Below, in pieces: positions 20,901 to 23,900 of a DNA stretch of 64,000 bases. The stretch comes from Hyphochytrium catenoides (lineage: Eukaryota > Protista > Hyphochytriomycota): NCBI GenBank assembly GCA_900088475.1, contig FLMG01000885.1:1-64000 (forward strand), written 5' to 3'. How positions within the stretch are numbered: the first letter of the stretch is position 1; each line of letters opens with the position of its first letter. Made by a program: the position numbers and the translations under genes. Under the pieces are notes generated by a model, which made no database searches, had not been told where the DNA came from, and saw only the letters and a program-made list of their open reading frames with translations.

Positions 20901-23900
20901 CATGCGGAAAGGAGCAGATTGTCTCAGCAAATGGGTGGGAGAAGCAGAGCGGCAGTTACGGCTTCTGTTCGAGGAGGCCAGACGTCAACAGGTGAGTTTG
21001 GAAAGATAGACGAGGCTATGATACGGAGTATTATTCTGGTCAGTCAGGTCCCGACTTGGCCGTTATTTTGCAGCTCACCATTTGGCTTTGTCTTGCTGAC
21101 TCGCTGCAGCCCTCCATCATTTTCTTTGATGAGATTGACGGCCTAGCGCCTGTTCGCAGTAGTAAACAGGACCAGATCCATGCTTCTATAGTCTCAACGC
21201 TTCTAGCCTTGATGGATGGCTTAGATAACAGAGGACAGGTAGGAGTGAGAGAGACCACGGGCGGCGTGACGGAGTGAACCGCATTAGGTAGACGAAAGAT
21301 AGGAAAAAGCTCGAAGTTTCTCCCGGGAGCTATGAAAATGCTGCCAAAGTAGACAAGAAAAGACCAAAGAGATTTACGTTCGCTCTTTCTTAATGACTAT
21401 TGCTCCACACCTCTTGGCGGTTGGCTCTTCTCCCCGCACTATCAATTGCTCCGTGTTGCCTCCAGGTGCTAGTGATTGGCGCTACTAATCGGATCGATGC
21501 GATTGACCCGGCCTTGCGACGGCCAGGTAGATTCGATCGTGAATATCTCTTCGGGCTACCTTCCCAGGTACGGGGTGGAGAACAGTCGAGAAGGCAATGG
21601 GTGTACTCATAAGCGATTAAAGGAGGTCGAAACAGCAGATAGTAGAAAATAGCAAGGAGACGGTTCAACGAAGGTACCTTCTCGGCAAACACATGTGGGC
21701 GAGTCATGGCAAGGGACAAAGGGGAGAATCCTTTCTTCCTGAACAGTATCGCCTTTCGCGGCCAAGTTACGAGATAACCTGTGCCAACTCTTTGATGTTC
21801 CTGCAGTCCGAGCGCAAAGACATTTTAGATATTCATACCAGAAGTTGGGTTCCCAAGCTTTCCCGTGCTTTCAGAGAGGAGCTGGCCGAGAGGACGGTTG
21901 GCTACTGCGGAGCGGATCTGAAGGCGCTGTGCGCTGAGACATCGTTCAGAGCTATACGAAGGTACGCGAAAGGAGAATAACATGGTGGTAGGGAGTGAGA
22001 TGGAGTTTCGACGCCGAGATCGGATAGAAGGAACACACATACAACCCATCGGCAGCCCCTGAGGAGAGCGACTTGGATTTATATGCTAAGGAGCGATGCA
22101 AGGAACCTGCCCAAAGGGGATGGAAACCCAGCTGGCGCAACTTCTGAGGCTCCTGAACCTTTCTGGGGGATGGAAACCCAGCTGGGCAACTTCTGAGGCT
22201 CCTGAACCTTTCTGACTCCCTGTCTCTCTTGTTTCCTCTCACCCTTCTCTCAGGCGTTATCCCCAGATCTACGCGTCCTCTCAGAAGCTTCTCATAAATC
22301 CGAAAGCAATCCAGATCACGCGAGAGGACTTCCTCTCAGCGATGCAAGGCATAGTCCCTACAGCGCATCGGTCCGCCGTCACGTACTCCGCACCCCTCCC
22401 CAAAAAGTTCTCGCCGCTGTTAAGGGAAGCTGTTGCAGAAGGTCTCCAAAAGATCAGAGATCTTTTGCCCTTTCTGAACCTTACAAAAGAAGTGCGAGAG
22501 GCCAAGGACGAAGAGGAGGTAGGCAGCCGCGTTACGCTACTTGGGGCAGCACATCAGTAGCAAAAGAGAGAACAACCTAAGGCGGTACCCAGAGAGAGGT
22601 CAGCGAAGCTCCGACTTACCGTGATATTAAGGAGGACATTATCAGGAGAGCATGTGATTCTGGACAAAGCTGGTGATTAGCTGACGCATTAGACAGCCAT
22701 TTCATAAAGCTTTACAAGTGGACGTGATGGTTAGGACGAACAGACCACATGAGAATGTTTGGATGTCGGGCTTGCTCAAGCTGCTCTGTTGTTTGATCCC
22801 GCTATAGGAAGTTCAACAGAGCCTCCCTGCTAGCATCTATGAGCGATGTTTCATTTGCCGGAAGCAGTTCGGTAGCGCTATCAATTACTGCGCAACCTGC
22901 GGGACTATGGCTGCCCACCAGAAATGTCTAGACAAAGAGGGTCTCCAAGCGGAGAGAGATGGGAAGGGGAGCCTGGTGTGGACATGCAAGGACTGTGACG
23001 ATCAGGGCAGGAGCAAACTAGAGTGAGTTGCTGTCTCTGCTTTGCGATGCGCTGCATCCCATCTGCTTTGCTGTGTACGACCTTTACGTTGTCCGCTTCG
23101 CTGTTAATAATCTCCGCTTCGCTGTTAATAATCTCTTTTCAGGCTTTGCCGTTTTTCATCCTCAAGGGAGACAGTCGCATTTTCAATCCTTACACACCTC
23201 TGCCTAGCTGATATCTAACATGTACTACTCTCTTTCGGACTAGGCCCAAGGCTCGGACCCAACACCGCGTCATACATAATCTTCGGTCCATGGTCTTCAG
23301 CCCAAGGGTACGTTGTCGTGATGAGGGAAGACAAAAGAGTTTGGGAAGCACTAGAAGAACCCGAACTATCGTCAGGGATAGAGCGAAGATGGAAGATGGA
23401 TTCCCCTCGTCTCGCATGATCTATTACGTGACTTTTCTCTTTTTGAGTTCTCTGAGAAGGGTTGACTCACTTGTATGTCGATCTCCAATTTGTTCCTTTT
23501 CTCAGTTCTTGATAGCTGGAAGGTCGGAGATGGGCCAGGATATCGTCGCTTCTGCTATTCTCCATCAATTGGAATCCATACCAGTAAGTGACCGTAACCA
23601 ACCTCCTCTTCGTGGCACCACCTGTCTCCCCTTCTCCACTTCTCGCCCCACTCTTTGGAGCAGTCTTCCCTTCCCGACTGTCTTCCGTGTCTCAGCTAAT
23701 CACCACTTACCTTTCAACCAAGGTGGTGCCACTGGACCTACCACGACTGCTCTCAGAGCCGAGCGCCTCTACTATGGAGGAGGCTCTAGTACGCCAATTC
23801 ACGGAGGCGAGAAGGAACTCTCCTTGCGTACTTTTCATGCCGAAAATTGACGCTTGGTGGCGAATAGCAAGCGAGCTGCTAAAGGGATCTTTCAAGGTGA

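What the first reader, a model, noticed from the sequence alone, without database searches (positions are those of the whole stretch)
22808..23022. ATAD2/Yta7 carries a PHD finger inserted between its two AAA modules
Seen: a dedicated exon encodes [31 protein letters not shown]...WTCKDC, a C4HC3 PHD with the typical Trp two residues before the last Cys pair. The exon is phase 0/2, so skipping it alone would frameshift the downstream AAA2 (FSPR|FLIAG). Known: human ATAD2 and yeast Yta7/Abo1 have AAA1-AAA2-bromodomain and no PHD. Inference: this histone chaperone/nucleosome segregase has gained a second reader. There is no Trp before the His and there is an acidic residue before Cys1, which fits an unmodified-H3K4 reader better than an H3K4me3 reader.
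Basis: partly seen in the sequence, partly recalled or inferred. Interest (0 to 1): 0.78.

Follow-up and report, generated by a model that had tools for sequence, protein, structure and literature searches.

The report
PHD finger inside an ATAD2 ATPase
The exon is real and encodes a diverged PHD-type zinc finger between the two ATPase modules of this protist's ATAD2/Yta7 histone chaperone, but the same insertion is shared by water moulds and the alga Nannochloropsis and is already labelled in public annotation, so it is an unstudied clade-wide feature, not a new invention of this genome.

Summary
Exon 22808-23022 (+) has an AG acceptor and a GTGAGT donor. Each overlaps an in-frame stop. It is the only C4HC3 pattern in the 64-kb window; 100 shuffles gave none.

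The flanking exons are ATAD2/Yta7 AAA1 and AAA2. The spliced core is 45-51% identical to stramenopile ATAD2 proteins, and the alignment runs straight through the finger.

Pfam's PHD model fails on this copy, and a search of 1.84 billion proteins with the exon alone found nothing real. Full-length relatives settle it. About 45 proteins carry a C4HC3 finger 102-129 residues after the AAA1 lid motif; here it is +101. They come from Phytophthora, Pythium, Lagenidium, Hyaloperonospora, Saprolegniales, Nannochloropsis and unnamed contigs. Several pass Pfam's PHD cut-off, and one public product name already says "Zinc finger, PHD-type".

A family profile matches CHD4, NSD2, AIRE and BHC80 PHD fingers. 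All PHD-bearing proteins fall in one clade that also shows losses.

The insertion replaces the segment holding the inter-subunit "knob" of human ATAD2. Histone-H3-tail reading is therefore plausible but untested, and a structural role is a live rival.

No RNA run was listed.

The parts
20196..20279 (+). AAA1 N-terminal exon (...[13 protein letters not shown])
   Evidence: Junction enumeration; tblastn of orthologues P0056, P0006 and P0141
20472..20621 (+). AAA1 exon with Walker A (GPPGTGKT)
20878..20991 (+). AAA1 exon ([16 protein letters not shown], the ATAD2-typical pore-loop region)
21110..21238 (+). AAA1 exon with Walker B ([10 protein letters not shown])
   Evidence: Used as the query that retrieved 80 ATAD2 loci
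21466..21567 (+). AAA1 exon (VIGATNR...RRPGRFDRE, sensor and arginine fingers)
21807..21961 (+). AAA1 lid exon ([11 protein letters not shown])
22254..22518 (+). End of the AAA1 lid (RYPQIY motif), linker helix and acidic tract (KDEEE); ends in phase 0
22519..22807 (+). Intron upstream of the finger exon (GTAGGC...TATAG)
22808..23022 (+). Finger exon: 71 codons plus 2 nt. C4HC3 PHD-type zinc finger with ligand codons at 22847, 22856, 22889, 22898, 22916 (His), 22925, 22985 and 22994; Trp58 at 22979
23023..23243 (+). Intron downstream of the finger exon (GTGAGT...ACTAG)
23249..23250 (+). Alternative AG acceptor that would restore the reading frame if the finger exon were skipped
   Evidence: use unknown because no RNA data were available
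23244..23307 (+). Basic linker and start of the first AAA2 strand (...RSMVFSPR); begins in phase 2
   Evidence: collinear with P0056 (...STRMTYHPR)
23506..23583 (+). AAA2 exon ([11 protein letters not shown], degenerate P-loop)
23723..23896 (+). AAA2 exon (VPLDLPRLL...FMPKIDAWW)
   Evidence: Best PDB matches are Yta7 838-881 and human ATAD2
24153..24284 (+). AAA2 exon ([17 protein letters not shown]...)
24477..24691 (+). AAA2-to-bromodomain linker exon (...[11 protein letters not shown])
24822..25879 (+). Bromodomain, in four exons: 24822-24873, 25031-25120, 25324-25441 and 25713 to about 25879
   Evidence: Aligns to the Pfam-scored bromodomains of P0056 and P0006
26650..26802 (+). Conserved C-terminal SH3/Tudor-like segment of the same gene
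   Evidence: 48-55% identical to P0056 1092-1143 and Pythium P0006 1372-1422; no Pfam hit

Best explanation
Shown:
- Exon 22808-23022 is a coding exon of a multi-exon ATAD2/Yta7-family gene.
- It encodes a diverged C4HC3 PHD-type zinc finger, inserted about 100 residues after the AAA1 lid motif RYPQIY and about 30 residues before the first AAA2 strand.
- The finger is at the same site as, and collinear with, a finger present in ATAD2 proteins of oomycetes, Nannochloropsis and unnamed relatives. In a tree built without the linker, all finger-bearing proteins form one clade. The simplest reading is one old gain in stramenopiles followed by losses (Albugo, P0070, the L046 group) and one replacement by Tudor domains (the L001/P0003 group).
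- The insertion replaces the segment that in human ATAD2 (native residues about 733-786) contains the 'knob', which plugs into the neighbouring subunit of the hexamer.

Inferred:
- The finger binds two zinc ions in cross-brace fashion and sits on the outer face of the double ring, next to the knob.
- It most likely acts as an extra histone-tail docking module for the H3 N-terminus. Its closest solved relatives (CHD4, AIRE, BHC80) favour H3 with unmethylated K4.
- It would then work alongside the bromodomain, which in human ATAD2 reads the H4K5ac/K12ac marks of newly made histones, on an enzyme that threads or loads H3-H4.
- This organism's copy is the most diverged one seen, so its binding ability is less certain than that of the oomycete copies.
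For: Exon anatomy and chance:
- Splice sites, frame constraints and the frameshift on skipping.
- A unique C4HC3 pattern, against zero in 100 shuffles.

Family assignment:
- The AAA2 exon's best PDB matches are Yta7 (2.8e-07) and human ATAD2 (5.5e-06).
- The spliced core is 50.9% identical to P0056 over 759 residues in one HSP, and 45-48% identical to oomycete proteins.
- The alignment through the linker is collinear.

Shared insertion:
- C4HC3 fingers lie at +102 to +129 from the lid motif in about 45 proteins.
- Pfam PF00628 passes its cut-off at that site in P0004 (36.4 bits), P0006 Pythium oligandrum (28.9), P0056 (25.0) and P0005 (24.8).
- It is present but below cut-off in Nannochloropsis oceanica P0141 (18 bits, residues 914-959).

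PHD identity:
- All eight ligands are invariant in the 28-sequence alignment A1.
- An HMM built from the relatives alone scores the window finger at 25.8 bits. Shuffles with the ligands held fixed gave mean 9.2, sd 5.2, maximum 23.6 (n=500).
- AlphaFold with A1 gives mean pLDDT 75.5.
- The top Foldseek matches are PHD fingers: BHC80, ARID5, ORC1b, BAZ2B.
- The A1 profile against the PDB gives CHD4 8e-22, NSD2 5e-19, AIRE 1.5e-14 and BHC80 1e-12.

One clade:
- The clade has 54 tips and support 0.991.

Knob mapping:
- P0056 aligns to human ATAD2 chain 8h3h at 202-330 and 385-458. The PHD segment falls opposite chain 331-384.
- The chain-to-native offset is 402, taken from the Walker B Gln at chain position 130 and native E532. 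E532 follows from ATAD2B E506 plus 26.
- The knob is given as residues 750-786 in PMC13060104.
Against: - No RNA evidence: no run was listed. A frame-restoring alternative acceptor exists at 23250.
- Taken alone, this copy fails Pfam PF00628. Its best sub-threshold hits are mixed: Prok-RING_1, FYVE, zf-RING_2 and PHD-like families.
- phmmer of the exon against 1.84 billion proteins gave only two spurious repeat hits.
- tblastn with orthologues does not detect the finger exon.
- All Foldseek E-values are 0.01 or weaker, and the model was guided by an alignment of PHD relatives.
- This copy lacks the Asp after Cys3 and the aromatic residue before the His that CHD4/AIRE/BHC80-type fingers keep.
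- Saprolegnian copies have lost the Trp and shortened the second loop to 7-13 residues. That pattern points to conservation of the fold more than of a binding surface.
- No binding data exist for any member.
Confidence: 0.6

Rival explanations
1. Structural zinc knob. The finger keeps its zinc ligands because it is a rigid extension of the ATAD2 knob that stabilises subunit contacts in the hexamer. It does not read histones.
For: - The insertion lies exactly in the segment that holds the knob in human ATAD2 and ATAD2B.
- It comes directly after the conserved acidic tract and hydrophobic-Tyr motif that is present across the family.
- Across the clade the eight ligands are invariant, whereas surface positions, the Trp and the length of loop 2 vary widely.
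- The window copy has lost two residues typical of H3-binding fingers.
Against: - Oomycete copies keep a near-canonical CHD4/AIRE/BHC80-type sequence (DDCDVCHGDEGELLCCDxCPGAFHxxCL) that scores up to 36 bits on Pfam PHD.
- A sister lineage has PTM/DIR17-like Tudor domains, another chromatin-reader fold, at the same site. This suggests the site hosts readers.
- Albugo, P0070 and all other eukaryotes do without any finger, so it is not needed for assembly.
Confidence: 0.3
2. The exon is not part of the main mRNA. It is a decaying or rarely included cassette, skipped by using the AG at 23250. The protein of this organism would then have a plain linker like P0070 or Albugo.
For: - A frame-preserving skip is possible.
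- This gene seems to use an AAG acceptor elsewhere, at 23722.
- The finger is unusually diverged.
- No RNA run could be listed.
Against: - The 71-codon frame is intact, all eight ligands and the Trp are present, and both splice sites are strong. This holds in a lineage that is only about 50% identical to its nearest retrieved relative.
- The HMM score exceeds all 500 ligand-fixed shuffles.
- The acceptor at 23243 has the better pyrimidine tract and is the first AG.
Confidence: 0.07
3. The finger is a RING-type (E3-ligase-like) or FYVE-type cross-brace domain, not a PHD finger.
For: The best Pfam hits for the exon alone are Prok-RING_1 (3.5e-05), FYVE (1.8e-04) and zf-RING_2 (4.3e-04). All are below their cut-offs.
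Against: - The ligand order is C4HC3, with C-x2-C then x5 to the His. This is the PHD arrangement, not C3HC4 or the RING-CH spacing.
- Orthologues at the same site pass PF00628.
- The family profile hits only PHD fingers at the top of the PDB list.
- Fold matches are almost all PHD fingers.
Confidence: 0.03

Closest known systems
Oomycete ATAD2-like proteins with an internal PHD finger. Examples: Pythium oligandrum Poli38472_007083 (P0006), Phytophthora nicotianae/ramorum/capsici, Hyaloperonospora arabidopsidis M4BW77, and the 'Plasmo...' protein named 'putative bromodomain, Zinc finger, PHD-type, AAA+ ATPase domain' (P0055; the organism name was cut off in the output)
   Same: The order AAA1, PHD, AAA2, bromodomain is the same. 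The finger is at the same distance from the lid motif. Identity is 45-48% over about 750 residues, with a collinear alignment. The C-terminal SH3/Tudor-like segment is conserved. They lie in the same clade.
   Different: The oomycete fingers are near-canonical and pass Pfam. The window's finger has one extra residue in loop 1 and one extra before the His, lacks the CCD and AFH motifs, and fails Pfam. The window gene has at least 16 introns, whereas most relatives have long uninterrupted ORFs.
Nannochloropsis oceanica KAM3572905.1 (P0141; locus L007 and P0066 belong to the same 90% cluster)
   Same: An ATAD2 protein with a C4HC3 finger 110 residues after the lid motif. It shares the V/I-Y motif before the finger.
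   Different: It comes from a photosynthetic ochrophyte. Its finger has Trp before the His (AAWH). Pfam PHD scores 18 bits, below the cut-off. Low-complexity Gly/Glu repeats flank the finger.
Human ATAD2/ATAD2B, S. cerevisiae Yta7, S. pombe Abo1 (PDB 8h3h, 7uqi, 6jq0)
   Same: Tandem AAA+ modules with an active AAA1 (Walker A and B present) and a degenerate AAA2, followed by a bromodomain and preceded by an acidic N-terminal region. The AAA2 exon's best PDB hits are these proteins.
   Different: They have no zinc finger. Opposite the 89-residue PHD segment of P0056, human ATAD2 has 54 residues including the knob, Yta7 about 49 and Abo1 about 9.
CHD4 PHD1/PHD2, AIRE PHD1, BHC80/PHF21A PHD (readers of H3 with unmethylated K4, by the published structures)
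   Same: These are the best PDB matches of the family profile (8e-22 to 1e-12), of the exon alone (CHD4 PHD2, E 0.028) and of the model (BHC80). They share an acidic residue two positions before Cys1 and a Trp two positions before Cys7.
   Different: The window copy has Ala instead of Asp after Cys3, Ala instead of Phe/Tyr before the His, and a longer loop with no P-x-G-x-W motif. No binding data exist.
Tandem PHD-bromodomain readers (TRIM24, BPTF, BAZ2A/B, ZMYND8)
   Same: One polypeptide combines a PHD finger and a bromodomain. Several of these PHD fingers appear in the profile and fold hit lists.
   Different: In those proteins the two modules are adjacent and form one cassette. Here they are separated by the whole AAA2 module and sit on a hexameric motor.

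Membership tests
ATAD2/Yta7/Abo1 family (bromodomain AAA+ ATPases) | AAA1 with intact Walker A and Walker B motifs and family-typical sequence | tested here: met
   [18 protein letters not shown] and [16 protein letters not shown] are present in the spliced exons. The Walker B exon is 79-98% identical to 80 ATAD2 loci.
ATAD2/Yta7/Abo1 family (bromodomain AAA+ ATPases) | A second, degenerate AAA module closest to the AAA2 of ATAD2 and Yta7 | tested here: met
   The AAA2 exon's best PDB hits are Yta7 838-881 (2.8e-07) and human ATAD2 (5.5e-06). The P-loop is replaced by AGRSEMGQ.
ATAD2/Yta7/Abo1 family (bromodomain AAA+ ATPases) | A bromodomain after AAA2 | tested here: met
   Exons 24822-25879 align to the Pfam-scored bromodomains of P0056 (65.8 bits) and P0006 (72.5 bits). 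The split exons themselves were not put to Pfam.
ATAD2/Yta7/Abo1 family (bromodomain AAA+ ATPases) | Hexamer formation and histone H3-H4 handling | not testable with these tools
   Needs biochemistry or cryo-EM.
PHD finger (Pfam PF00628 and relatives) | C4HC3 ligand order with PHD spacing (C-x2-C ... C-x2-C-x4-5-H-x2-C ... C-x2-C) | tested here: met
   All eight ligands are invariant in alignment A1.
PHD finger (Pfam PF00628 and relatives) | Conserved aromatic residue two positions before Cys7 | tested here: met
   Trp58 in VWTCKDC.
PHD finger (Pfam PF00628 and relatives) | Score above Pfam's gathering threshold for PF00628 | tested here: not met
   For the window exon, PF00628 is not listed even at E<=10; PHD-like families reach only 19-20 bits. 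The threshold is met at the same site by P0004, P0005, P0006 and P0056.
PHD finger (Pfam PF00628 and relatives) | PHD fold | tested here: inconclusive
   AlphaFold with A1 gives pLDDT 75.5. The Foldseek top hits are nearly all PHD fingers, at probability 0.9-1.0 but E 0.01 or weaker. The single-sequence model was poor, with pLDDT 49.
PHD finger (Pfam PF00628 and relatives) | Binding of two zinc ions and of a histone tail | not testable with these tools
   Needs metal analysis and peptide binding assays.
Unmodified-H3K4-reading PHD subtype (AIRE, BHC80, CHD4 PHD2) | Acidic residue before Cys1, Asp after Cys3, and no aromatic cage | tested here: inconclusive
   Glu12 is present and there is no cage Trp before the His. 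The Asp after Cys3 is Ala here, although it is Asp in most oomycete copies. The residue roles come from published structures recalled from general knowledge; they were not tested here.

The most novel reading that the evidence does not exclude
The knob linker between AAA1 and AAA2 of ATAD2 is an evolutionary docking site for interchangeable chromatin-reader modules. It carries a PHD finger in oomycetes, this protist and Nannochloropsis, and PTM/DIR17-type Tudor domains in a sister lineage. The histone segregase/chaperone would then be steered by a second histone mark. For the PHD form this would be the unmethylated H3 tail of new histones, read together with acetylated H4 by the bromodomain.
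Probability: 0.3. Interest if true: 0.6.

Novelty: new member of a known kind. Interest (0 to 1): 0.4.

Why it matters
ATAD2, Yta7 and Abo1 are studied as bromodomain-guided motors that load or strip H3-H4. All solved members come from animals and fungi and have only one reader domain.

A whole stramenopile clade, including the Phytophthora and Pythium plant pathogens, carries a second chromatin-type module at the knob position. That gives a natural experiment on how such motors are targeted or stabilised.

For genome annotation, this diverged copy escapes Pfam and exon-level searches and is recognised only through full-length orthologues. Some public Phytophthora gene models are truncated within or just after the finger.

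For this window itself the result is modest: it is an orthologue of an existing, unstudied architecture.

Tried and rejected
- Word search with the 71-aa exon found no candidates.
- phmmer of the exon against 1.84 billion representatives gave two hits. Both are repeat proteins unrelated to ATAD2.
- A metagenome scan with the exon found no relative.
- The single-sequence AlphaFold model was too poor to use, with pLDDT 49.
- A PDB search with exon 22254-22518 gave nothing at E<=0.001.
- IQ-TREE failed on the thread setting, so FastTree was used instead.
- The RING, FYVE and Prok-RING readings were considered and rejected, on ligand order and on the orthologues.
- Pfam on the C-terminal SH3/Tudor-like ORF gave no hit.
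- Four literature searches or look-ups found no paper describing a PHD finger in any ATAD2. The word 'PHD' in PMC5070193 refers to a secondary-structure predictor.
- Locus L005 comes from a human-gut metagenome assembly. It was left out of every local analysis as a precaution and was not examined.
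Full report
**1. Observation**

Window 22808-23022 (+) is bounded by TATAG|GA and GA|GTGAGT. It translates without a stop into 71 residues that carry C14, C17, C28, C31, H37, C40, C60 and C63, with Trp58 two residues before C60.

The acceptor AG is part of the in-frame TAG upstream. The donor G starts a GAG-TGA read-through. The exon therefore cannot be longer in this frame, and the other two frames are closed.

The C4HC3 pattern occurs once in all six frames of the 64-kb window and never in 100 block shuffles.

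**2. Gene model**

I enumerated GT-AG junctions that keep the frames of the conserved ORF pieces. This gave 17 exons from 20196 to about 25879, whose 2304 nt translate into a 768-residue core without a stop. The core reads AAA1, linker, finger, AAA2, bromodomain.

- AAA1 carries GPPGTGKT and [10 protein letters not shown].
- AAA2 has a degenerate P-loop, AGRSEMGQ.
- Twelve of the sixteen introns are phase 0.
- The finger exon enters in phase 0 and leaves in phase 2.

However, an AG at 23249-23250, 7 nt beyond the normal acceptor, would restore the frame (...KDEEE|ARTQHRV...). Skipping is therefore not excluded by frame logic alone.

No RNA run was listed for the stretch, so splicing is inferred, not observed.

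**3. The exon taken alone looks ambiguous**

- Pfam gives only sub-threshold hits to several cross-brace families: Prok-RING_1, FYVE, zf-RING_2 and PHD-like. PF00628 is absent.
- The PDB sequence search gives CHD4 PHD2 at E 0.028.
- The word search found nothing.
- phmmer against 1.84 billion representatives found only two repeat proteins.
- A metagenome scan with the exon found nothing.
- The single-sequence AlphaFold model was poor, with pLDDT 49.

**4. Relatives**

A metagenome scan with the Walker B exon returned 80 ATAD2 loci. L005 comes from a human-gut assembly; I set it aside unexamined.

Among the other 79 loci, only L007 has a C4HC3 finger between AAA1 and AAA2. L007 is nearly identical in the finger region to P0066, and P0066's 90% cluster includes Nannochloropsis oceanica KAM3572905.1.

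I then used long ORFs from these loci to pass the length filter of the word search.

- The L001 ORF pulled out Pythium oligandrum P0006 and two unnamed proteins, each with AAA, AAA_lid, bromodomain and PF00628.
- Pfam places their PHD between the AAA1 lid and the bromodomain. In P0006 the lid is at 690-724, the PHD at 832-877 (28.9 bits) and the bromodomain at 1123-1203. In P0004 the PHD scores 36.4 bits.
- Searching with P0006 residues 640-1000 gave 2253 hits, of which the best 120 were listed.

About 45 of the retrieved proteins have a C4HC3 finger 102-129 residues after the RYPQIY-type lid motif; the window has it at +101. They include:

- Phytophthora (at least 12 species), Pythium, Globisporangium, Lagenidium, Hyaloperonospora, Bremia and a 'Plasmo...' protein;
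- Thraustotheca and Achlya, plus Saprolegnia with a shorter loop;
- unnamed Logan, ENA and JGI proteins.

One public product name already reads 'putative bromodomain, Zinc finger, PHD-type, AAA+ ATPase domain'.

Animal, fungal, plant, red-algal and amoebozoan hits have no finger. Neither do Albugo or P0070.

**5. Orthology**

The window core is 50.9% identical to P0056 over 759 residues in a single HSP that runs through the finger. It is 45-48% identical to the oomycete proteins.

The linker alignment is collinear. In order it shows the lid, a helix, an acidic tract, an I/V-Y motif, the finger, a basic stretch and the ...PR|hLIxG strand. tblastn of the orthologues recovers my exon set and a conserved C-terminal segment at 26650-26802.

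In a FastTree tree of 141 sequences, built with the linker columns removed, all 41 finger-bearing tips fall in one clade of 54 tips (support 0.991). The window is sister to the oomycetes plus P0056/P0070. This agrees with earlier notes of the scan that call the organism an oomycete relative. The 13 tips in the clade without a finger are:

- two truncated Phytophthora gene models;
- Albugo;
- P0070;
- the L046 group;
- the L001/P0003 group, whose linker carries PTM/DIR17-like Tudor domains instead (31 bits, above the cut-off).

The tree is midpoint-rooted and has FastTree support only, so the number of losses is provisional.

**6. Is it a PHD finger?**

- In the 28-sequence alignment A1 all eight ligands are invariant.
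- An HMM built from the 27 relatives scores the window finger at 25.8 bits. This is above all 500 shuffles that keep Cys and His in place (mean 9.2, maximum 23.6).
- With A1, AlphaFold gives pLDDT 75.5, and 80-88 over residues 11-60.
- Foldseek's top hits are BHC80, ARID5, ORC1b, AF10, BAZ2B and BRPF1 PHD fingers, with probability up to 1.0 but E 0.01 or weaker.
- The A1 profile hits CHD4 (8e-22), NSD2, AIRE (1.5e-14), PHF12 and BHC80 (1e-12).

The family is a PHD finger of the CHD4/AIRE/BHC80 type. The window copy is its most diverged member:

- it has one extra residue in loop 1 and one before the His;
- CATC replaces CCDxC;
- MAAH replaces GAFH.

**7. Structural context**

P0056 470-760 aligns to human ATAD2 chain 8h3h at 202-330 and 385-458. 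Its PHD segment lies opposite chain residues 331-384.

The Walker B Gln is chain residue 130. The native residue is E532, which follows from ATAD2B E506 plus the 26-residue shift between the paralogues. The offset is therefore 402, and the replaced segment is native 733-786.

PMC13060104 gives the ATAD2 'knob' as residues 750-786. It describes the knob as projecting into the adjacent subunit and stabilising the hexamer.

The acidic tract and hydrophobic-Tyr/Phe motif seen before the finger is present across the family. That this motif is the knob aromatic is my inference. On this reading the finger is appended to the knob, on the outer face between the two rings.

**8. Mechanism**

Shown: a conserved PHD-type module at the knob position.

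Inferred: it binds two zinc ions and either docks a histone tail or stiffens the knob.

- I favour a reader role because oomycete copies keep a near-canonical reader-type sequence and a sister lineage has Tudor domains at the same site.
- If it is a reader, the likely ligand is the H3 N-terminus with unmethylated K4. This would fit an enzyme whose bromodomain reads marks of new H4 (PMC13060104) and whose yeast relative threads the H3 tail.
- The structural rival is supported by the invariant ligands against variable surfaces, and by saprolegnian copies that lack the Trp.

My odds:

| Claim | Odds |
|---|---|
| Real coding exon with a PHD fold | about 0.9 |
| Same ancestral insertion as in the oomycetes | about 0.85 |
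| Histone-tail reader in this organism | about 0.4 |
| Specific for unmethylated K4 | about 0.25 |

**9. Novelty**

The architecture is absent from the ATAD2 literature I could search. It is widespread in public stramenopile proteomes and is labelled by automatic annotation.

The window gene is a new, diverged member of that unstudied group.

Noticed in passing
window 26650-26802 (+): A C-terminal SH3/Tudor-like segment (…[22 protein letters not shown]…) belongs to the same gene. It is 48-55% identical to P0056 1092-1143 and Pythium P0006 1372-1422. Pfam finds nothing. It matches the other first-reader note, s1-360217.
   Followed up: partly
L001:7602-8276 (ORF 5034-10151) and P0003 763-788: In a sister lineage (AT-rich, with poly-Asn tracts) the same AAA1-AAA2 linker carries PTM/DIR17-like Tudor domains (PF21743, 31 bits, two stretches) instead of a PHD finger. 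A further copy sits in the N-terminal region of L001.
   Followed up: partly
P0096 residue 1405 (JGI metagenome protein, 1654 aa): This ATAD2-like protein has a canonical PHD finger 441 residues after the lid motif, far downstream of the AAA1-AAA2 linker. Its position relative to the bromodomain was not checked. It looks like a separate acquisition in the family.
   Followed up: no
window 23584-23722: Orthologue alignment supports an AAG acceptor at 23722 (…ESIPV|VPLDLP…). The better-looking CAG at 23695 would add 9 residues in frame. Which one is used is unknown without RNA data.
   Followed up: partly
window about 23094-23136, in the intron after the finger exon: A 21-bp unit (CCGCTTCGCTGTTAATAATCT) is directly duplicated in tandem.
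   Followed up: no
P0060 (Phytophthora ramorum) and P0061 (P. boehmeriae): These public gene models break off within or just after the start of the finger (…NHVDCDVCHGE / …NHDDCD) and jump to the bromodomain linker, losing AAA2. They are probably mis-predicted introns.
   Followed up: no
window 20280-25712: Twelve of the sixteen introns of this gene are phase 0, most with CAG|GT donors. Intron lengths run from 118 to 292 nt.
   Followed up: no
L005 (contig of a human-gut metagenome assembly): This ATAD2-like match continues without an intron past the query exon. It could be Blastocystis or another gut eukaryote. It was left out of all analyses as a precaution and not inspected.
   Followed up: no
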